A DNA stretch of 64,000 nt, from the NCBI GenBank assembly GCA_000708835.1, contig DF237262.1, forward strand, positions 1-64,000, written 5' to 3'. How positions within the stretch are numbered: position 1 is the stretch's first letter; every line of letters begins with the position of its first letter. The DNA comes from Klebsormidium nitens. Taxonomy: Eukaryota; Plantae; Klebsormidiophyceae. The position numbers and the translations under genes were made by a program. Shown here piece after piece: positions 1 to 12,454 of this stretch. The notes below the pieces were generated by a model. It did no database searches, had not been told where the DNA came from, and saw only the letters and a program-made list of their open reading frames with translations.

Positions 1-489
1 GTGCATTCGAGGCCGTACTAAAGTATGCATACTGTCCGGTACGTCATGAGCCAGAGCGCATAGACTGCGGCCGGCAAAGCTTTATTGAGCAACTGTTTGA
101 ACAAGAGACCGCATGCATGATCAACCTGAGTCAGTCACTGACATCGCTCCCAAACTCTCCCCAAACTAAGGACGTTGTTATTATGAATTGGGACTATCTT
201 GTGGCGCCTGCCAGGGTCGTCCAATGAATGTTCGAAAAGGAGGGGACCGTGAGCTCCAATTGCTTACACTAATGCCTAACTCCTAGCTTGGCGCTCTCAC
301 TACTTGCGGCAAGGCTGAATAAGTTACAACTATTTGATGCAACTGCTCAACGGTAACGGATGATCGGGTCAAAGCCTCACTCAAAAGGTTTGATCTCTAC
401 ACCTAGACTCTACCAGTCACTTCGCTAGGTGACCTTGATAAATGCTGTGCTACAACGCAAGACTGCATACCTTTCTAGTGCGCACTGCA

Positions 490-2458
490 CTACGTGTACA
501 GATCCGGAACGCTATCCTTGCCGTCACTGCCGCTCTCAGCACTGCTGGCTAAGCTGCGCGACCTTCGCTCCGCATCAAACACATAGTAGCGCTCATCTTT
601 CATGGGGAATAAGAGGCCGAATGCCAGCGCGATGCTGGCCCATGCTGCTAAAACCTGACTGATGATGGAGGTGTGACTAACAGGCCAGATTTGCGTGATC
701 AGCGTCTCCCCTCGCGAGTCGAGGAGCACAACGAGCGACATCGAGCCGGATCGCCCGGGGGAGCTCGGCCACGCGTCTTCGCGGATCCACGACGCAACAG
801 TCTCCTGCAAAAATCAACCGTGTGGGGTGCGAGCTGAGACTCCATTTGCGATTCAGTCGAACTGTACGGTACTGATGGCACAGAAGGTGGCCTTGACAGC
901 CCAGCTGCCTTGCAGAAAGTAGTTCGTAATCCGCTCTATGATCCTAGTGAACGAGCTTGTTGTGATTCTTTTGAAGGAAAGATCAGACTCCTTTCAGGCG
1001 AGGTTAGAACTAGAGTCGCTATCACATGGATGAATTCCATGCGATTCACTTGAACTCCCATTTGAGTGACACCCTGAGTATGGCGCCAAGGCAACACTCT
1101 CTGCCTTACTAAGAGAAAAGCTCATAGAAACGGAGGATGCTGATTATAGATTGAAAACTTCTCAGCGCAAACGATGCATCAGCGTGTGTACACGAGCAAT
1201 GAAAAGCTGGGCATGGTACGCAGGACAACCGTCTCAGCAACTCGTCACAAATCACAATCAGGAATTTACTTACGTAGGAGCTGTTTGAATGAATCAGCTG
1301 ACTGAGTTGTTTGCTCACCCGGGTCCCGTTGATATACTTGGTCGTGGTCAAGTCCAAGCGCATGGTTAATTGGCTCCAAAAGGACCCGTTTGCTTTCTCG
1401 GCAGTGCTGTAGTAGCTATACCCGGTCTCTCCGAGCACCTTCGTTCCGTTTTCATACGATGCCAGGAAGCGCATGAACGACGTAATGCCGATGCTCGAAA
1501 AGATGTCCAAGCTGCAGAAGCGTGGTGCACTGTAGGCCGTTTCCCCAGCCTGCCCGACGATCCCCTCAAAGTCCGCATACAGACACAAAGAGTTATCCCC
1601 GCCAGTCCAAGTCGCTGGCTTGACATATGCCCCGGTAGGCACGCCGGCGCTCGAGCGCACTACGAACTTGTCACTAGGCACCGCGGTGCCGTTCCGAAAG
1701 TATGCCTTTATTGTTTTAGGAGTGGGTGGCGAGTAGCCGTCGTAGTCTTGGATGCAGCGAAAGCGGACGTCCGTTTCTGTCAAGAAGGTCTCCCAGTCCG
1801 CCGGACTGTAGGTAATGCGGTGGCATGTGGTGATTCCCGGGAATCGGACGCCGCTTTTCCCAATTGACAACGATGTTGGCAGGGTCTGTGCTCGCAGCAG
1901 AACCTGCCACAAAGCAATGCTTACTCACTCCAGCACCCAAAGTGGACAGAATCATTCCTGGTTGGGTCAACTTAGCAAGTGACCAAGTGCTCTTGACCAA
2001 CTTAGCTAGACCTGAGAAAACAAGCCCCCTCCTTTGATGCGCAGAGCAAGGGCTCCATTCGCAGCAAAGATTGAGACAACAGATTGTTGTGCTGGGATTG
2101 CCAGGCTGAGACTTCAGAAGAGGTGCATGCAATCAAAGCTTGTGCCTCTCATGGTTTCTGGAGCGACAAGTCAAACCACACAGCTTAGAACATTTTACAG
2201 ATTAAGACGAATATGACCAAAACGCTCTGTGCGAAAGAATAATCAGAGCTCTGGCGTGTGTATGAAGTGACCGCAACTTTTGGAAATTACCCATACTGTG
2301 AGAATGAGCACGCTCGATAGATGCGACTGCAGGAGGCTTACCGACACAAGTATGGCGGCAAGGAAGCTCGCAAAGACAAGGATCAGGAGGACGAAGCACG
2401 CCCACGCTCTCCGCCGATACTGCACCGGCTGCACATCCAAGGGCATGAAGAAGCCCAT
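490..2458 (-). CDS. Two-transmembrane protein with DEG/ENaC/ASIC-like architecture (3 exons: 2342-2458, 1319-1903, 490-804; ~338 aa)
   Basis: All junctions are canonical phase-0 (TCG|GTAAGC, tggcag|GTT, CGG|GTGAGC, tttttgcag|GAG). The spliced protein reads RRRAW-hydrophobic TM1-...LPTSLSIGKSGVRFPGITTC, then an ectodomain with four N-glycosylation sequons (NGT x3, NGS), then SLVVLLDSRGETLITQIWPVSHTSIISQVLAAWASIALAFGLLFP (TM2) and a short tail. The gene is well supported; the family assignment rests on motif spacing only. Confidence 0.65.
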
Positions 2459-2755
2459 CCTTGCAGAAGGAACCACAAACCCCGCTGCAAAGCGAACCAG
2501 GATCTAATCCAGGACATAAGGGCACATTGACTCGGGTCCTGAGTAGAAACGGCTGAGAACAACGCACCCCGTAGCTTAGAAAGGATTAGCAAGAGCAATT
2601 CACATGAAGGCGCCTTGGTTCAGGTCCTGAGTAAGGAGGGCTGGAACTCAGTTTGATGATGCCATGTACGATCTGAGTACACGCTGTGCTTGTAATGCTG
2701 TAGACACGGTGGTGGCCCTGAGTACAACATACTGCCACCGTCAGCTTGCATTGAA

Positions 2756-3394
2756 ATGTCCTTCAGCCGCTCCTGCAGAAGAGAGGACACACAGCGATCA
2801 GTGCCCGCAGCTCAGCAGGCAACCGTGAGGCAACCGTCCAAAGACATTGAGCTAGACATCATGCCACTCGCCATATTTGTGAAAACATTGGACAATGCGA
2901 CCGATGAAAAACCTTTTCTGGTCAAAGGCTACAAAAGTCATCAAGATTGCTTGGCGCTGCCTGGCCTTTCAAAAGACTGCGAGTGTGGGGCTCGAACCCT
3001 TCTCGCGACAACCCGAATGAAGCTGGTACAGAACAGGCTGCAAAAAAACAGCAAAAATATGCTAGAATGTGCCAGAGAGCTGCCTAGTGGCAGAGGAACA
3101 CACCTGTGGGTGTTTTGCGGTGCTGTTGGGCCTTTGTAAAGCCAAAAGTTGAACGCCACAACTGGCAATGCCTTGATTAAATATAATATGGCATGCACAA
3201 GTTTTATTGGCGAAAGGCTGGCTGAGACGGAGCTGACATTTCCGTTCAACGGAATGCAATGGACCGGAACGTCACTCAAAGCCAACGGAACGATACATAA
3301 TCATAATTACGGCTACTGTAGAATGTTGCCAAAAGGCCAAGAATTTGCACTTGGCGAAGCATTCGTTTGCCAAGATGTGCTACGCGTGCTTTAA
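2756..3394 (+). pseudogene. Interrupted reading frame, possibly a relic of a MULE/FAR1-type (WRKY-GCM1) transposase DNA-binding domain
   Basis: ORFs 2756-3139 and 3149-3394 share one frame, broken by a single TAA. The second half has C...W...HNH (ACTSF...QWTGTSLKANGTIHNH), reminiscent of the FAR1/MULE zinc-finger end. Weak similarity only. Confidence 0.25.
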
Positions 3395-4345: not shown

Positions 4346-7300
4346 CTAAAGGAACATCGATCTCGAAAGGTGCCCTTGAAGGTGAGACGGGCTCTCGCGC
4401 GGGCGGTGATGCGGGCTCTCCGGGATCTTGTGCGAGAAGCTGAGGCCACGTGTCGGGCTCTCCGGACCCCTATGCGAAAAGCTGAGGCCACGTGGCGGGC
4501 TCTCGGGGCCCTTGTGCGAGAAGCTGAGGCCACGTGGCGAGCGTGGCAGCTTCGCGGGGGTGATGGCGGGAGGCTCTTGGCGCGCGAGCTTGCGGCTGAA
4601 GCTGGACTCGCCCGTACGGACGTCTTCGAGAAAGGCGCCGACGGTCTGGTTGCTCACGGAGCCGCTTCTCTGTGGAAGGGTAATGAAATCTGATGTGAGC
4701 ATTCTGGTTGATCCGAGAAAGATTTGCCCAAGAGCTAGTGTGCTGGGTTTCTATCACACGGCATCCTTAAATATAAAAGAAGGTCCAAATGAAGAATCAG
4801 TCCAATCATACCGCCTATCAAAAGAACGTGACTGCCGACGACGGTTTGGTTAACAAGGGGCAACGTTCGGTGCACTCAAGACAAGCAGGCTGATTCGCAT
4901 GAACGAGCCCACAAACTGCAACTCGTCAGAAAAGTTTAGAACAAGATAAGCCACTCGCCTGCAACTCGTCAGCCATGATAAACGCCCACGTCTCCACATC
5001 CAGCACCGGACCATCCTCTAGGCTCCACGTGGCAGCCTCCTGCCCCGGGGGCCGGACATCCAACGGCCGAAGCAGCAACGAGAGCGGCGACTTGAACCCG
5101 GCCCGCCCACTCTCCTGGTCGCCGGAAGTCCCCACAGCGCGCGCGCTCAAAGGAACGGGTGACCCAGGAGGGGAGAAAGTTTTGGGCGCCAAAATGGACT
5201 GGAATAAAGTGGGCAGGTTGCAGAGCGGGTTAAAGAAGTAGAAGAGGGCGGCCGCCCTCGAGCCGTCGCCCAGGGCTGAAGGGTCGCCGAGAAGGAGGCA
5301 GTCGCCGTTGCGAAGCTCGGCGAAGCGCTGCAGGGAAAGACCGTAACTGGTTGAGTAATTGACTTCCGCTGCTGCTCATCATCTTTCTTCCCATCAAAAT
5401 GCTATCTGCAACCCTCCTCCGGCATGATTGTTTACGACAGTCAGTCCGGAAAGGCGAGAAGATTCAAAAAAATCCTTGACCCCGCTTCGTAAATGCGGGA
5501 TCGCGTAGCATTCACACCTGCTCATTGAAAAGAACAGTTCGGAAACCCTCTGAGCATCTCAGACTAGAATCAACACTGCAGAACTCATAAGAAACTACCA
5601 AAGGAAAGTTCAGAAACGGTTGCTCCTAGTAGCGGAGCAGAGAGCACGAACGTCTCACAACATCCCGAATAAGAAAGCAAAAGAAGCTACATCGAAGTGG
5701 TCCTCTGATTCCATAAAATACCTATTTAAGACAACAATCTCTAAAGAATCGCAGTATGCCTCACCGGCAGCGGCATCCCGTTCAGCAGCGCCGGCGCGTC
5801 GTTGAGCGACCTGGCAATCACGGTAGCGCAGCTCGCTTTTCCCGCGGCGGGGGGGGCGACCACCATCTCAATGTGCTCCTTCGCCAGCCCCCCTGGAAGC
5901 TTGAAGCCGACCGCTGGATCACTCCCGATGCTGAAAAAGCGGGCGAAAGGATGAGAATGCGGCGACTCCACGATTAGTCGCTGAACGTCACGCTATATGA
6001 GGACTGGAGACTTTGACTTGGAAACTTTATCGGAAGTTGGACTTTGTGGCGCTGATTGCGAGCCTACAGGGTCAGGTAAATCGTCTGAAAACATCACAAC
6101 GTGAAACACATACTCCTCCCTCACGCATCTTCTTTCATTATTGGAGCTCAATCCACCCTTCCAAGATGCAATACGCGTGGACCGCAGCTTGAGACAGTCA
6201 AAGCTTCAAGTCCGGCCAATCACCTGTTGACACCTGGCGCCAGGACGTGCACCGCCCAGCTGGCCTTCAATGCGTCTCCAGACGTTTCCTCCCGTTCCAA
6301 AGCATGCGCCAGTAGTCCCTCTCCCGAGGCTTCCCTGAACAAAACCGACTCGTCTACTGCAATTCCGAGCCGCCTCAAAACTCTCAACCCGGCAACCAGC
6401 TTCCGGTTCGACGCGGAATTCTCCAGGAGCCGCGTCTCGTCTTTCGGCGTTCCGGCTTCCTTGTCCGCTTCCGTTTCCGGTTCCGGTCTAGGAGACCCCT
6501 TGTGGTCGCTGCCCACTAGCAGCTGCACGAGGAAAGGCGACGCGGCGCCGATCGCCGACGAAAAGCCCTCAAACCTCCGCCATTGCGGTTCTGCCACGTG
6601 GACAATCCGCTTCTCCACTTCCGGCTCCGGTTCCGGTTCCGGTCCCGTCGCTGAGTCAATGGACATACTCACTGCCGCCTCCGTTTCGGTAGCTCTATCT
6701 GAAGTCTGCGCGCGTTCGCAATCCGTTCCGTTGTCCAATAAACTGATGACGTCAGTCGCCGTTCCGGCGTTCGCGGTGTTCAATATCTCCGTTCCGGACG
6801 CTGCTGAAGCATACGCTACAAGCCCTTCCGTATCGGTGACCGTATCTACACCGTTTGATTCCGTCTCAGTAGAGCTAGACGCCAACTCAAGCGGAACCGG
6901 ATCCGTCATGCTGTCGCGAAAAACGACCTCCTCCGTTCCGCTTCGAGCATCTGTACACGAGACACCGGAATCCGTTCCGTCGTCCACCACCTTTGGCGGC
7001 GTCTCCGTCTCCGTCGCGGCGCTCTTCAACTTTGGGGCCTCCGTTTCCGTTCCTTCCGTTACAACGTCGGCCGGACTCGTTTCCGTGGAGGACGCAGCGG
7101 TTTCCACCCCGGGCTCCGTTTCCGTTCCTGCCGACCTTGATTCCGGTAAGAAGGCGTCGGTTCCGCTGGACACCGTTGGCGTCGGAGCCTCCGTTTCCGT
7201 TCCCTCTGTGACTGTGACTGCCCTGACTTCCGGATCCGTTTCCGTTTCCGCCGTTGCCATAATGAGCCCGTCCGTTGCAGTCCCTTCTGTTGCCGTTTCC

Positions 7301-10300
7301 GGCCAAGCAACAGGCTCTGTCTCGGTACTTTCCGTTGCGGTCGCCGGAACGGGTTCCGTTTCCGTCCCTTCCGTTGCCATCGTCGGTACGGGGTCCGTCT
7401 CCGTGGCACTGGTGACACTGAAACTCTCCTCGCTCGCTTCGGACGAGCGCCGCGTCCTGATCCGCAGTTCCGGCCGCTTTCCGTTCCCGTTCCGCTGCTC
7501 CAGCAGGTCCTTGAGCCCCTTCGGAGAGGCACGGGGGCTCCCCCTAGGGCTGATTCGTCCCGCCAACGACCCAACCACCCCCCCAACGAGAATGCGCGCC
7601 GCGTCCGCCCAAGTGTGCGAGCGCGCGCGTTCGATCGGACGGCTGTGATTGGCAGAGATGGTGTCCCACGTGTCATCGAGGACTCGGGACGAGAAGCCTT
7701 CCACCGGAGTCAACATGCTCGAGGTCGGGGAGTCGGGGTGGGAGTCGGGGTTCCCGTTCCGGTCACCGAGTCCGCTGCCGAGGAGCCGCGACGCGACGGA
7801 GTGCGCCTTGAAGAACGAATTCTCTGTTAGCGGGTCCAAGCGAGCCGTTGCCAGCGTTTCTTTCCCGATCGGCGCTTCGCCGCCCAGTATTTCTGTCGCG
7901 CTCTCTAGTTGCGCGACCGGGGATTGCGGCCCGGGCACAACGAGTGCAGCCGGAACGCTTGCCATGCTCTGAACAACCGCCCGAAGTGACTCAATCTCCG
8001 TTCGCAGGGACTGGATCAGCTTTTCGCGGGGGTCTTCGTTGAGGACCGGTTTGTTTTTGATGCGCTTGGCCCGGTTTGCGTACCGAAGCGTCGAGAGCGT
8101 CTCTTTCACGTCCTTTTCCGCGGGGCTGATGCTTGCGACCATCACCGTCTTGCTGTTACCGCCCAGGCTCTCCTTGAGAAGCCACGTGAGGGACGAGTTG
8201 CGGTACGGCACGAAGTCGCTGCCACGTGCCAGCTCCGTGATGACCTGGACACGTGGACGGGTTAAGCTAAATTTCTGAGTCCACTTGATGCCAAGGTTTG
8301 AGCGGTGCTTCGTCATTGCTTACTACGAAACGAAAATTTCTTGTTACTTTCGAAGAGAAATTTTATGTACCGCCACAGCCGTCAAAAAGCCTGTCTGTCG
8401 AAATGATGAGCAAAGACTGAAGTCAAAAGGAGGAAGAACAGAAGAAAGAGCGACCACTCGCAAGCTCGAAATGCACACAATTAAGCCAGCTGGAAATACT
8501 TTTTGCCTGAAATTACGGACGAAGTTAATTGGCGTCAATCCTTCCGTGGCGAATCCCTCGAGCCTTTTGTAAAAGGGGTGAAAGAGAAGCGCAACGAACG
8601 ACCTCCGCTTCCAGAGGCGCACAGCCATCACCGATTAAAGTAATTGAAGCACACACTCCTTCACAGCCAACTTTACAAGCACCAAGCATAGTCACCTGGA
8701 ATGCTAATGACAGAAACTTGGGCAGAAAAGTATATTGACGGGCTTGCCACTCACGTCATTCAAGAGCGACAGCGACTTGTTGATGAATCCCGACTCCTTG
8801 AGCCGCGCCCCGGTTGCATTCGTCCGGTTCTGCCGCTCGCTCCCTGCGAGATCCACCAGGTTGATCCTGCTAACCCGGCGGAAGGGTACCCCGGTCTCGG
8901 GGGACGCCTTGGTCTGCACGGGAGGTTTGCTTAGGTTAACGTCTAACCCGACTCTGAGAGAGCGGTATGTATATTTGCAGCTTGCGTGTCTGTGGTAAGA
9001 GTTGCTGGGGTCCACTCTGTTGATTCAACGAATCCTAGTTCCGTGAGAGCATAATTGAAGCTTCGGTGAGGATTTTTTTTCTGCTGATCTCAATTTGGAC
9101 AAGATTCGTGACTGATCTTGCGAAGTTCCAATAGCACTAGATCGATGCACACTACTGTGAGCTTATTCAAAGGCTGGACTTGTCCTTCGAGCAACGTGAT
9201 GAAAGATGGACGTGAGACTCTGACATTGCGAGAGATCCCGGCGGAACGTCCGAAAAGAATGGTTGGGTGATGGCCGAGCTCCTCAAGTGAACCGCTATAT
9301 CGGAGGTGTAAGACCGAGCAGACGAGACTGTCAGGACTGCTATTTTTATAAATATAAATACATGCGCCCATGATTTTCCATGGACACGAAAATGGTCGAC
9401 TATATGACGACTGGACGTGGATGAGTCTTAGCTATACTCCTCTTCCATCGCGATAGGGGAAAAATCAGCCCCAAAAGCCCCCCCCTCTCACCTGCGTAAC
9501 GGTCAATGTGAACACCGTATGACTCCGGCTGGACAGCTTATTCATGTCCGTCGCAGCAATCGTCCGATTTCGGGACCCCTCCTCCAGCAGCGCCGCCATT
9601 TCCGCCCAGCTCGACACGTGGCGCTCCGTCAGCCCCTCCACGTACGGCCCCTTGTCCGGGTGCTCCCGGATCTTGAGCGTGGCCCGCGCCCCCTGGTTAA
9701 CCGCCTTGGTTTGACTAACCCCGCCCCGGACCGCCCGCTCGGGGGCCTCCACCGACCCCTCGGACTCCGCCACGGACGCCACGTCACTGCCCACGTCATC
9801 CTCCGCGTCGCCGTCCTCCCCCTGGCTCTTCCCGAACCGCGTCGCGGGGGGTTTGGCCGCGCCCGCTTTGCGCGCGCGTTTTACGAACCTCTGCGCCGCG
9901 AGTTTCGCCTGGACCATGACGCGGAGAGAGGGTGCCCGGGGCCGGGAACCGGGGGCCCCGCTCTGCTCGGAATCGCTGGTCGGTTCGCTGGCGTCACGGT
10001 CGGTGTCGGAGTCGTCGCGCTCTGAGTCGCCGTCTTGGAAGTAGGACGCGGGGGCCTTGGTGCGCGCGAGCAGATCGCGCACTTGCTCGCGGTAGATCTC
10101 GAGGTACGTGACCTGCGGCCAATGGATGACGGGCAAACGTTTCAGACTCTGAGCATCTTTTACGCTCCAAAATGGTTTCTCGAAAGGGTTCTTGTGCAAA
10201 CGAAGCTTTGCCGACCGGCATCAAGAGACGTCGCCGTACCAACAATCTTTCTTCCGATGCAGAAGGACGAAGCCGTTCAGACAGGATAATAATCCAGTAG

Positions 10301-12454
10301 GGTAAACTTGAAAAGGCAGATTCGAAGTGCCGAACACAGCAATCAACTTGGTGACCCTAACAGTATTTCGGCATGTTCTGCGCTTAGCTCGAGACAACAC
10401 GGCCAAGGCCCATTCTAGCTTCGGACGGGCCGATCAGAACTGAGAAGAGCGTCGATGTTGAAAGCACGGGCGCAATAGGACGCGATCCCAGACCCAACTG
10501 AACCTCCATCTCAAAACTGGTCGCCCCTAAGCACCTGCATTTCTATTTCTCCCTGAGCGACCGTTCGCGAAGCAGTGTGGAAAATCGGAATCGACCCCGG
10601 AAAACGGAGGGAAAATCGATCCTAAAGAGCAGCGCACCTCTACCGAGACGTCTGTGCCCGCGTCCCGCTTCTCCTTTAGCCGCTGCAGAAGCGCGGCCGC
10701 CAGCCGGGGGGTGATACCGGCCCCCTCCTCCGTTGAATCGCCCATCATGGAGAAACTCTTGCCCGCGCCGGTCTGGCCGTATGCGAACATCTGCGGATGA
10801 AGGGGAGCGCTTATCTGCCTGGTCGCTCCACTTACGCTATCCGATTGGTCGATCTTGAGAGCTGAGAAAATTGGTAGAACTATTTCAAGCAAGCAAAGAG
10901 GTGGTTCAAGCCCGGTCTGGCCGTGTACGAACATCTGTGGATGACAGGCATCGCTTATACATGGCCGCTTCGGCTATGATATGGGGTTGGTCGAGGCTTG
11001 GAAGGAGGGAAGAGTTGAAGCAAAGCTTAAAATATAGGTAGGGCCAAGCTCGGTCTGCCCCTTATACGCGAGCGGTTGTATATTACGGAGTATGTATCTG
11101 ACCGCTTCGCTTAACGTTCCCGATCGGTCCTGAGAGCTGGAAGGACTCTAACAGATTGGCAAGCCACTCAACGGGACTCGCAGGTAAGCAGATGTGGAAA
11201 GGTGCAAACGCGCATCGCCGTACCAATCGCCCGGCTCGAGAAGAAGGGGTTCAGCTTCCTAGTGTGTCGAGAGGCATGTGCTCTCCTTCGTCCGTAACGA
11301 GAAACCTCTGACTCACTAAAGGATCCGAGCAATTCTCTTATGCTTTATCTGGCACGAAAGCACTCACAATTTTCGTACTAGCAAGGTGAGGACACCCTGG
11401 AACGTGAGCTACACCGCAAAGACCCCAAGAGGAAGATTCGTCTTACGCTCAACGGAGGCCTTTTCAGCTCACCGTAACGTTGTATCCCTCTAGCGCACTG
11501 TTCAGCGACTGGTGCCCGAGCGCCTGAAACAGGGCCTCCTGCAGCTCGGCCTTCGCCCGGGGGATCCCCCCGTCCCCTAGCTCGCTGTCGTTCTGCACTA
11601 GGTCGAATGTAAACTCCTGGGCCCCGAGGGGAGGAATCGACTCCGTCGGCCGGCGCGCGCGCGCGCTCGCGCCCGACTGGTCGGTGGCGCGGTGCGCGCG
11701 CGGGGGCTCCTCGTAGAGCGTGATTTTGGGGCCCTGGATGACGACGGCCTGGCGGCTTTGGCACGCGCGCTCGCGCTCGGTGAGGGGGCGCACGCGCACG
11801 GCGACCACGACCTGCGGGATGATGTGGAGAGGTCGCCGTTAGAACCAGTCTGCTGACTTCGAGGACAAGAGTAAGCACAGGTTTCTCTTATTCGAATCAA
11901 GAGTCGTATCTGGTGCGATGCCATATTGTCATTAATCTGCCAGGAAGTGAAGAAATTATAAGATGTATGTTTTGCGGGCTTTGAGATGAATCTAAGAACC
12001 TTAGCCCAGACAAACCTGTGGCTGGAGAACCGCGGTTCGGAAGAGCCCCTTTGCCGGGGTGCCGTATGCCCCCATGTCTCGATCCTGATGAACCGTTTGC
12101 AAGGAGCAGCCGGTTGCATTGAACGCCAAGTTACTAAGCAGGCCGCAAGACGTCGAGACAGTCCCTGAAAGCAAAATTCCACCTCAAAATGGTGAATCGA
12201 CTCCAGACAGGATAAGGCAGCCTACCTTCTCGAGTCCTGCAGAGGTCCGGAACGAGGTCACGGGCTCCGCTATTTGCATCGAATCATTCTCGCTTGCCGC
12301 TGCGGGTTCGAGATCCGACTCTCCGTCACGCAGTTTCAGTGAAGGAAGCGCCATAAGCACTGGGGCTATGCTGGTGGGGCTCAGGCGGGAGTCCGAAGGT
12401 TGGAAATCCGTGTCGGCTTCTGTCTGAGAAATAGGCGCCGAGACCAACTCCTCC
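4346..12454 (-). CDS. Kinesin-3 family motor with FHA domain (5' end probably incomplete). Exons: 12226-12454, 11473-11811, 10638-10790, 9492-10112, 8755-8913, 6224-8244, 5765-5930, ~4955/4959-5327, 4346-4689
   Basis: Motor motifs in order: [13 protein letters not shown]-loop [27 protein letters not shown], switch I NKLSSRSH, switch [39 protein letters not shown], neck [12 protein letters not shown] (kinesin-3-type). Spliced FHA: SPFLVQL...LAPGVNSIGSD...[10 protein letters not shown]...LLNG...[11 protein letters not shown]...FYFFNP. Phases agree except at the last junction. Confidence 0.92.
4428..4550 (-). repeat. 42-bp coding tandem repeat (~3 copies) encoding GPESPxRGLSFSH[KR] in the last kinesin exon
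   Basis: gagaagctgaggccacgtg recurs at 42-bp spacing. Confidence 0.85.
6640..7420 (-). repeat. Degenerate coding repeat array of [GSA]TE[TS][EDP]-like motifs in the kinesin stalk
   Basis: SATETD, EGTETE (x3), [43 protein letters not shown] and others; ttccgtttccgt/tccgt recurs on the + strand. Confidence 0.85.
10768..11135 (-). repeat. Decayed tandem copies (~140-bp period) of the intron/exon junction of the kinesin P-loop exon
   Basis: 10768-10800 ccggtctggccgtatgcgaacatctgcggatga vs 10912-10944 ccggtctggccgtgtacgaacatctgtggatga (30/33 identical). A fainter third copy lies at ~11045-11135. Confidence 0.85.

What the first reader, a model, noticed from the sequence alone, without database searches (positions are those of the whole stretch)
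490..2458. Compact DEG/ENaC/ASIC-like two-TM channel candidate in a plant-lineage genome
Seen: the spliced ORF has RRRAW, a hydrophobic helix, exactly 40 residues from that W to FPGITTC, a glycosylated ectodomain, and LVVLLDSRGETLITQIWPVSHTSIISQVLAAW leading into a second helix. Established knowledge: DEG/ENaC/ASIC channels have an R-x-x-x-W at the start of TM1, FPAVTxCN about 40 residues later (as I recall ASIC1), and a beta12/TM2 entry of the form LDIFFE-x-ETIEQ-x-LLGDIGG. The two segments align without gaps (ITQ vs IEQ; II vs LL). Differences: no N-terminal HG motif, no Cys-rich thumb (ectodomain ~240 aa, 4 Cys), and no GG/GAS filter. Inference: a divergent, minimal member of the two-TM ENaC/P2X-topology superfamily, which land plants are generally held to lack. 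No single ORF in the track reveals it.
Basis: partly seen in the sequence, partly recalled or inferred. Interest (0 to 1): 0.8.

Follow-up and report, generated by a model that had tools for sequence, protein, structure and literature searches.

The report
Algal two-helix ENaC/PAC-like membrane protein
A real, spliced and expressed gene of the land-dwelling green alga Klebsormidium nitens encodes a small membrane protein that crosses the membrane twice; its first helix and the strand after it weakly but repeatedly resemble animal ENaC/ASIC sodium channels, and it is predicted to form a three-part bundle, so it may be a channel of that design, but this is not proven.

Summary
The gene is real. 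It has three minus-strand coding exons (2458-2342, 1903-1319, 804-490). Spliced RNA contigs from four studies confirm them, and they equal the public 338-aa record KFL_003130010 of Klebsormidium nitens.

By sequence the family is confined to Klebsormidium: one 386-aa paralog and a few orthologs.

- **For an ENaC/PAC-like reading.** The only family signal is Pfam ASC (DEG/ENaC). It is below threshold, appears in all three full-length members, and always covers TM1 plus the FPxITxC strand (best 23.2 bits against a cut-off of 23.6). A profile of that segment finds almost only ENaC beta, ENaC gamma and BRTNaC1 in the PDB. A three-copy fold passes its controls (0.60 against 0.00), with TM2 on the axis.
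- **Against.** The ectodomain and the beta12/TM2 segment match nothing. HG, the Cys-rich thumb and GAS are absent. AlphaFold models are poor (pLDDT 39-41), and the PAC/TMEM206 likeness does not stand above background.

Verdict: a plausible remote ENaC/PAC-type trimeric two-helix protein, but not a demonstrable DEG/ENaC member. The scan noted similar two-helix ENaC/PAC-like candidates on other pieces of this genome (probably the paralogs).

The parts
2342..2458 (-). Coding exon 1 (39 aa): short cytosolic N-terminus with RRRAW (2416-2402) and most of TM1 (2401-2342).
   Evidence: Translation. It equals residues 1-39 of P0001. The GT donor at 2341-2340 and the joint 1903|2342 are seen in RNA contigs of 4 runs.
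1904..2341 (-). Intron 1 (438 nt, GT..AG).
   Evidence: The joint skips 438 nt in all four runs. Depth is about 5 in the intron against 30-90 in the exons. Intron ends were checked.
1319..1903 (-). Coding exon 2 (195 aa): end of TM1 (1903-1895), FPGITTC (1843-1823), and most of the ectodomain with 4 Cys and sequons N110, N191, N211 and N231.
   Evidence: Translation. It equals residues 40-234 of P0001. The joint 804|1319 is seen in RNA contigs.
805..1318 (-). Intron 2 (514 nt, GT..AG).
   Evidence: The joint skips 514 nt in all four runs. 1274-1318 is in frame without a stop but absent from the spliced contigs.
490..804 (-). Coding exon 3 (104 aa plus stop): last ectodomain strands (LVVLLD... 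from 735), TM2 (675-607), and a cytosolic tail ending in DLYT.
   Evidence: Translation. It equals residues 235-338 of P0001. dN/dS is 0.18 against an environmental relative, L002.
2459..2772 (-). 5' UTR segment joined to exon 1. It is followed upstream by a 5'-UTR intron (about 2773-3103) and a further UTR exon starting at about 3104.
   Evidence: Contigs run unbroken from 2340 to 2775. In all four runs they then continue with letters that lie at 3107 onward (table 7; sequence). The exact intron ends are inferred from the CT..AC rule.
300..489 (-). 3' UTR (at least to 300).
   Evidence: Spliced contigs extend from exon 3 down to 300-312 (table 8).

Best explanation
KFL_003130010 is a 338-aa type-II-like two-pass membrane glycoprotein. 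Both ends are cytosolic and a beta-rich loop of about 234 aa faces outward or into the lumen.

It most likely assembles as a homotrimer. TM2 would line a central axis through its conserved face (T279, S283, Q284, A287, G297), and TM1 would sit outside. That is the design of the ASIC/ENaC and PAC channels.

Its TM1 and first strand look like a remote relative of the DEG/ENaC N-terminal module. The rest has diverged beyond recognition, or is of different origin.

Shown:
- the gene model, its expression and purifying selection;
- the two-TM topology;
- the sub-threshold ASC signal.

Inferred: the trimer, the pore and any ion conduction. Selectivity and gating are unknown.
For: **Gene.**
- Spliced contigs are present in 4 runs of 4 studies.
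- The exon translations equal the public record P0001.
- dN/dS is 0.18 for exon 3.
- The paralog has the same three-exon layout.

**Topology.** There are two hydrophobic 19-aa windows only. The four sequons and four Cys lie between them, and basic residues flank the cytosolic sides.

**ASC signal.**
- Pfam ASC is the only family hit shared by P0001, P0004 and P0005, always at profile positions about 16-83.
- On the N-terminal 80-92 aa alone the hits are E 4.2e-5 (23.2 bits), 2.4e-4 and 3.3e-3.
- The whole-family profile hits only ENaC beta in the PDB (E 0.12).
- The N-terminal profile hits ENaC beta (E 0.033), BRTNaC1 (0.23) and ENaC gamma (1.2-2.2). These are 7 of its 8 hits among 177,635 sequences, all in one register.

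**Trimer.**
- ESMFold2 with three copies gives ipSAE 0.60, 0.61 and 0.60 against a best control of 0.00.
- Partner pLDDT is at least 56 and the runs agree in at least 79% of contacts. The mark was reached by 21 of 30 proteins solved as pairs of one chain and 0 of 23 solved as single chains; that calibration used two copies, not three.
- The interface is made of TM2 residues 280, 283, 284, 287, 290, 291, 294, 297 and 298, residues 46-54, and strands 225-244 and 263-273.
- The TM2 residues invariant among paralogs (279, 283, 284, 287, 297) lie on that axis-facing side.

**Language-model and structure neighbours.** These include PAC/TMEM206 (0.84-0.86; TM 0.46-0.52) and an arthropod ASC cluster (TM 0.51/0.49). 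Foldseek on the sister's model ranks PAC/ASOR chains 1-12.
Against: - Every ASC score is below Pfam's gathering score of 23.6, and the match includes a TM helix, where HMMER E-values are optimistic.
- A clearly spurious family (YfeC-like) reached E 0.0035 on a piece of the same protein. This shows the noise level.
- The ectodomain and the beta12/TM2 pieces hit no ASC, PAC or P2X profile or PDB sequence.
- HG, the Cys-rich thumb and the GAS filter are absent.
- AlphaFold2 models are unreliable (pLDDT 39.2 and 41.1).
- The Atlas neighbours also include the non-channel ERV41/46-ERGIC family.
- The trimer controls replaced a copy with unrelated proteins. They do not control for generic packing of hydrophobic helices, and a pass may reflect memory of solved PAC/ASIC trimers.
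Confidence: 0.45

Rival explanations
1. It has the same two-pass topology but is not a channel. It would be a lineage-specific membrane glycoprotein whose loop is a beta-sandwich with some other role, for example an ERV41/46-ERGIC-like cargo receptor of the early secretory pathway, or a cell-surface or wall-facing protein. On this reading the ASC-like N-terminus is chance or convergence on a common 'TM helix then first strand' solution.
For: - Atlas structural neighbours include the ERV/ERGIC families at TM 0.47-0.59.
- No pore motif known from ENaC, ASIC, PAC or P2X is present.
- All ASC scores are below threshold.
- The fold searches are not above background.
- A conserved C-terminal DLY(P)T tail could be a sorting signal.
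Against: - Pfam ERGIC_N and COPIIcoated_ERV give no hit even at E 10, while ASC does in three members.
- 7 of the 8 PDB hits of the N-terminal profile are DEG/ENaC proteins.
- The three-copy fold passes with TM2 on the axis.
- The conserved polar and small face of TM2 (S283, Q284, A287) is unusual for a mere anchor.
Confidence: 0.4
2. It is a DEG/ENaC family member in the strict sense: a full ASC domain with palm and beta-ball, and a sodium-selective, amiloride-sensitive pore. This is the strong form of the reader's reading.
For: The TM1-to-FPxITxC module is in register with the ASC profile and with ENaC beta, ENaC gamma and BRTNaC1, including the 40-residue spacing. The trimer prediction also passes.
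Against: - The Pfam gathering score is not reached.
- Only about 60 of the 455 profile positions match.
- There is no HG, no thumb and no GAS, and the loop has 4 rather than about 14 Cys.
- The beta12/TM2 segment is not recognised.
- ASC clusters are not among the nearest by language-model features, while PAC is.
Confidence: 0.07
3. It is not a functional gene, but a chance ORF or mis-annotation.
For: There are no named relatives outside Klebsormidium.
Against: - Spliced transcripts are present in four studies, with canonical introns.
- dN/dS is 0.18 against a relative.
- A paralog at 22% identity has the same exon layout and conserved motifs.
Confidence: 0.01

Closest known systems
DEG/ENaC/ASIC channels (Pfam ASC, PF00858)
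   Same: - Two TM helices with cytosolic ends.
- A basic residue and a Trp at the start of TM1.
- About 40 residues to a [FL]P-x-[IV]-[TY]-x-C strand, in register with ENaC beta, ENaC gamma and BRTNaC1.
- A predicted homotrimer with TM2 on the axis.
   Different: - The ectodomain is half the size or less.
- It has 4 Cys instead of about 14, and no thumb.
- There is no N-terminal HG and no GAS or G-x-S belt.
- Only the first 60 or so residues are recognised, and all scores are below the gathering score.
Proton-activated chloride channel PAC/ASOR (TMEM206, PF15122)
   Same: - Size (338-386 aa against about 350), two TM helices and a compact, mostly beta ectodomain of about 230-250 aa with N-glycan sites.
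- The nearest named neighbour by language-model features after Y80K_N (0.84-0.86), and by Atlas structure (TM 0.46-0.52).
- Top 12 Foldseek hits and top 10 VIA re-alignments for the sister's model.
- PAC itself is known to share topology and assembly with ASIC/ENaC without sequence homology (PMC11059273).
   Different: - There is no Pfam TMEM206 hit at E 10.
- The cytosolic N-terminus is much shorter (19 aa).
- The fold match comes from a pLDDT-41 model and is not above background in the unbiased search.
- No alignable equivalent of the anion-selectivity Lys319 could be established.
ERV41/ERV46/ERGIC-32 (PF13850 ERGIC_N plus PF07970 COPIIcoated_ERV)
   Same: A two-pass topology with a luminal beta-rich domain of similar size. 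These families appear among the Atlas structural neighbours (TM 0.47-0.59).
   Different: There is no Pfam hit to either family, and they are not among the Foldseek or VIA top hits. These proteins are cargo receptors, not channels.
Unnamed Mucoromycota two-pass 'transmembrane protein' clusters and the ciliate Y80K_N family (PF27811)
   Same: These are the highest language-model similarity for both paralogs: 0.92-0.96 with 195-222 of 256 features shared, and Y80K_N at 0.90-0.91. Some are fused to Kelch propellers.
   Different: No sequences or alignments were obtainable here. Exhaustive phmmer did not reach them. Their function is unknown.

Membership tests
DEG/ENaC (Pfam ASC PF00858) | Score at or above Pfam's gathering cut-off (23.6 bits) for the ASC domain | tested here: not met
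   Whole proteins score 13.9 (P0001), 19.3 (P0004) and 17.1 (P0005) bits. N-terminal pieces score 17.0, 23.2 and 20.7 bits.
DEG/ENaC (Pfam ASC PF00858) | TM1 preceded by a basic residue and Trp, followed after about 40 residues by the FPAVTxCN strand | tested here: met
   RRRAW, then 40 residues, then FPGITTC. The match to ASC profile positions 16-83 is in one register in three members, and likewise to ENaC beta, ENaC gamma and BRTNaC1. The terminal Asn of the motif is His or Pro here.
DEG/ENaC (Pfam ASC PF00858) | N-terminal His-Gly (HG) gating motif | tested here: not met
   Residues 1-19 contain no His. The paralogs have none either.
DEG/ENaC (Pfam ASC PF00858) | Large Cys-rich ectodomain with a thumb (about 14 conserved Cys) | tested here: not met
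   The loop is about 234 aa with 4 Cys (66, 89, 146, 169). The paralogs have 3-4.
DEG/ENaC (Pfam ASC PF00858) | G-x-S (GAS) selectivity belt in TM2, and a recognisable beta12-TM2 segment | tested here: not met
   TM2 has no G-x-S. The C-terminal pieces and their profile hit no ASC model or DEG/ENaC chain.
DEG/ENaC (Pfam ASC PF00858) | Palm and beta-ball fold of the ectodomain | tested here: inconclusive
DEG/ENaC and PAC (shared) | Homotrimer with TM2 lining the central axis (in silico test only) | tested here: met
   ESMFold2 with three copies gives 0.60 against a best control of 0.00. pLDDT is at least 56 and at least 79% of contacts agree. TM2 residues 283 and 287 of different copies touch each other. 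This is the model's own confidence, not a measurement, and the calibration used two copies.
PAC/TMEM206 (PF15122) | Pfam TMEM206 profile match | tested here: not met
   There is no hit at E up to 10 for the whole proteins or the pieces.
PAC/TMEM206 (PF15122) | Fold of the PAC subunit (two TM helices plus a compact beta ectodomain) | tested here: inconclusive
PAC/TMEM206 (PF15122) | Lys at the cytosolic end of TM2 that sets anion selectivity (human K319; PMC11059273) | not testable with these tools
   P0001 has K303 just after TM2, and the paralogs have D-L-R-R there. No reliable alignment to PAC exists.
ERV41/46-ERGIC (PF13850, PF07970) | Pfam ERGIC_N and COPIIcoated_ERV matches | tested here: not met
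   There are no hits at E up to 10. The only link is Atlas structural similarity at TM 0.47-0.59.
P2X receptors (PF00864) | Pfam P2X profile match and ten conserved ectodomain Cys | tested here: not met

The most novel reading that the evidence does not exclude
This Klebsormidium family would be the first green-lineage representative of an ancient, eukaryote-wide superfamily of trimeric two-helix channels. That superfamily would unite DEG/ENaC, PAC/TMEM206 and large unnamed fungal (Mucoromycota) and ciliate (Y80K_N) families. The TM1-to-FPxVTxC module would be its surviving sequence signature. On this reading the ENaC/ASIC design predates animals and was present near the origin of land plants.
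Probability: 0.3. Interest if true: 0.85.

Novelty: new variant of a known kind. Interest (0 to 1): 0.6.

Why it matters
DEG/ENaC channels are described as absent from land plants on the basis of Pfam ASC searches (PMC12806904). Outside animals they are known only from a few unicellular lineages (PMC10507113). PAC shares their design without detectable sequence homology (PMC11059273).

An expressed, conserved 338-aa protein in a terrestrial streptophyte alga, with an ASC-like first helix and strand and a predicted TM2-lined trimer, would matter in two ways if confirmed:
- it would extend this channel design into the green lineage;
- it would give a minimal scaffold, and a concrete candidate, for pH, osmotic or mechanical sensing at the water-to-land transition.

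If it proves not to conduct, it still marks an uncharacterised two-pass protein family with probable fungal and ciliate relatives.

Tried and rejected
- **Exon-by-exon searches.** Pfam and PDB searches of the separate exons found nothing meaningful.
- **Searches for relatives.** The word-index search with exon 2 found only the gene's own record. Exhaustive phmmer of P0001 gave one true relative (P0004), one ortholog fragment (P0002) and a spurious Ig-repeat protein (P0003). Searches with P0004 and with the family profile added only P0005 and P0006.
- **PDB by sequence.** Single-sequence phmmer of the paralogs gave only noise. The ectodomain profile gave no hit, and the C-terminal profile gave only profilin and VP60 noise.
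- **AlphaFold2.** Two runs on the shallow alignments gave pLDDT 39 and 41. Searches with P0001's own model returned only noise or helical hairpins. The wide VIA search with the sister's model was dominated by helical hairpins.
- **Pfam noise.** The YfeC-like, DUF308, NapE and VirB8 hits are treated as noise.
- **Window.** No second paralog lies in the window.
- **Literature.** Searches found no paper on this protein, on Y80K_N, or on PAC or ENaC relatives in algae or fungi.
- **Rejected readings.** P2X, a chance ORF, and the donor at 1273.
- **Joining the exons.** I used the stored public record P0001, after checking piece by piece that it equals them.

Full report
**Gene model.**

The feature lies on the minus strand. 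There are three coding exons, all phase 0:

| Exon | Window | Length |
|---|---|---|
| 1 | 2458-2342 | 39 aa |
| 2 | 1903-1319 | 195 aa |
| 3 | 804-490 | 104 aa plus stop |

- The introns 1904-2341 and 805-1318 have GT..AG ends.
- I searched the exons one by one by reference. The exon-2 search returned the public record 'hypothetical protein KFL_003130010 [Klebsormidium nitens]' (P0001, 338 aa).
- The three exon translations equal P0001 piece by piece. I used that stored record for whole-protein work and made no join of my own.
- Contigs of four public runs from four studies carry exactly these two joints. Word depth is 30-90 over exons against about 5 over introns. The contigs also show a third joint in the 5' UTR (about 2773-3103).
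- The transcripts use the donor at 1318. The in-frame gtaagt donor at 1273 would add 15 residues and is not seen in them.
- Exon 3 has dN/dS 0.18 against an environmental relative (L002, 83.5% DNA identity).

The gene is therefore real, expressed and under purifying selection.

**Check of the observation.**

All the described elements are present:
- RRRAW at residues 15-19;
- a hydrophobic helix at 20-42;
- exactly 40 residues between W19 and F60 of FPGITTC;
- four sequons (N110, N191, N211, N231) and four Cys (66, 89, 146, 169) in the loop;
- LVVLLDSRGETLITQIW running into a second helix at about 278-300.

Only two 19-residue windows are strongly hydrophobic. With basic residues before TM1 and after TM2, the topology is N-in, C-in, with a loop of about 234 aa outside or in the lumen.

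**Relatives.**

By sequence the family is tiny.
- Exhaustive phmmer over 1.84 billion representatives gave only three hits: a 106-aa ortholog fragment (P0002, 88%), a 368-aa protein (P0004, E 6e-4) and a spurious Ig-repeat protein.
- P0004 led to the K. nitens paralog KFL_006660060 (P0005, 386 aa) and a 245-aa fragment (P0006). The family profile found nothing more.
- P0001 is about 22% identical to the paralog group.
- It shares with that group the RR-x-AW start, the [FL]P-x-I-x-x-C strand, the first two loop Cys (C66 and C89 are invariant; the paralogs carry 3-4 loop Cys), a Y-[IL]-N-G-[ST] sequon, the I-T-[QE]...P...T-x-I-x-S-Q-x-x-A-x-W...F-G TM2 entry, and a DLY(P)T end.
- It also shares the same three-exon layout.

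**Comparison with known families by sequence.**

- Pfam ASC (DEG/ENaC) is the only family that recurs. For whole proteins it gives E 0.028 (P0001), 6.3e-4 (P0004) and 3.1e-3 (P0005), always with protein residues about 8-81 on profile positions 16-83 of 455.
- On the N-terminal 80-92 residues alone the scores rise to 17.0, 23.2 and 20.7 bits (E 3.3e-3, 4.2e-5, 2.4e-4). They stay under the gathering score of 23.6.
- The whole-family profile hits only ENaC beta in the PDB (E 0.12).
- A profile of the N-terminal segment gives eight hits at E up to 10 among 177,635 sequences. Seven are DEG/ENaC proteins: ENaC beta 0.033, the centipede BRTNaC1 0.23, and ENaC gamma 1.2-2.2. All align W, TM1 and the P-x-[IV]-T-[IV]-C strand in one register.
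- None of these is significant alone, and the three family members are not independent of each other. HMMER statistics are also lenient for TM helices: an obviously spurious YfeC-like hit reached E 0.0035 on another piece.
- Even so, the concentration on one family, the one predicted beforehand from the motif and spacing, is unlikely to be pure chance.
- The ectodomain and the last-strand/TM2 pieces match neither ASC nor any DEG/ENaC, PAC or P2X chain.
- HG, the Cys-rich thumb and the GAS belt are absent.

**Structure.**

- AlphaFold2 on the shallow alignments failed (pLDDT 39.2 for P0001 and 41.1 for P0005). It predicts little more than two long helices and a mostly beta loop.
- The P0001 model finds only noise.
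- The ESM Atlas holds both proteins (pLDDT 0.57 and 0.52).
  - By language-model features, both are nearest to the same unnamed Mucoromycota clusters (0.92-0.96), then Y80K_N (0.90-0.91), then PAC (0.84-0.86).
  - By structure they resemble Mucoromycota proteins (some fused to Kelch propellers), PAC (TM 0.46-0.52), ERV/ERGIC proteins (0.47-0.59) and, for P0005, an arthropod ASC cluster (0.51/0.49).

**Assembly.**

- A three-copy ESMFold2 prediction of residues 8-325 passed the tool's mark. It scored 0.60, 0.61 and 0.60 against a best control of 0.00, with pLDDT at least 56 and at least 79% of contacts shared between runs.
- The mark was reached by 21 of 30 proteins solved as pairs of one chain and by 0 of 23 solved as single chains. 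The calibration used two copies, and a pass can come from memory of solved relatives.
- The confident contacts put one face of TM2 (280, 283, 284, 287, 290, 291, 294, 297, 298) on the three-fold axis, with 283-283 and 287-287 touching between copies.
- TM1 (32, 35, 36, 39, 43) sits outside. Residues 46-54 and strands 225-244 and 263-273 form the membrane-proximal interface.
- The TM2 residues invariant across paralogs (T279, S283, Q284, A287, G297) fall on that same face. That fits a functional, possibly pore-lining, surface. This last step is inference.
- The controls used unrelated proteins, so they do not exclude generic helix packing.

**Reading.**

- The best-supported account is a homotrimeric two-helix protein of the ASIC/ENaC/PAC design, whose N-terminal module is a remote relative of DEG/ENaC (confidence about 0.45).
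- The main rival is a non-channel two-pass glycoprotein, for instance ERV-like, with a chance or convergent N-terminal likeness (about 0.4).
- Strict DEG/ENaC membership fails several defining features.

**Literature context.**

- Pfam-based surveys report no DEG/ENaC in land plants (PMC12806904).
- Non-animal DEG/ENaC homologs are known only in heterokonts and a filasterean relative (PMC10507113).
- PAC resembles ASIC/ENaC in topology and assembly without sequence homology (PMC11059273).
- No paper on this protein was found.
- Earlier notes of this scan describe similar two-helix ENaC/PAC-like candidates on other pieces of the same genome, probably the paralogs, with similar cautious conclusions.

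**Context.**

The next gene on the same strand (about 6.2-11.8 kb) is a kinesin. Nothing links it to this gene.

Noticed in passing
window 2773-3103 (minus strand): There is a 5'-UTR intron. In all four runs the contigs leave the window sequence at 2775 and continue with letters found at 3107 onward. The transcript therefore starts in a further UTR exon upstream of 3104.
   Followed up: partly
window 1274-1318 (minus strand): A second in-frame donor (gtaagt at 1273) would add 15 residues, including an NSS sequon. It is not used in the spliced contigs examined, but rare alternative splicing cannot be excluded from contigs alone.
   Followed up: partly
window 6220-11810 (minus strand): The neighbouring multi-exon gene is a kinesin (Pfam Kinesin motor domain in five ORF pieces, E down to 5e-23). 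It has a long Thr/Glu/Ser/Pro-rich repetitive tail encoded in 6220-8316.
   Followed up: partly
P0001 residues 334-338 (window 504-493); the paralogs' C-termini: The C-terminal motif D-L-Y-(P)-T is kept between paralogs that are otherwise 22% identical and whose tails differ. It may be a short sorting or binding motif.
   Followed up: no
L001 7898-9011: Next to the paralog KFL_006660060 lies an 872-aa gene with TIG, EGF-like and Glyco_transf_29 (sialyltransferase-like) domains. This is an unusual combination for a green alga.
   Followed up: no
Atlas neighbours of P0001 and P0005: Mucoromycota proteins of about 1000 aa combine a domain that resembles this two-pass protein (TM 0.62-0.65 by query, over nearly its whole length) with Kelch beta-propellers ('galactose oxidase'). 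This hints at a wider family with fused sensor domains.
   Followed up: no
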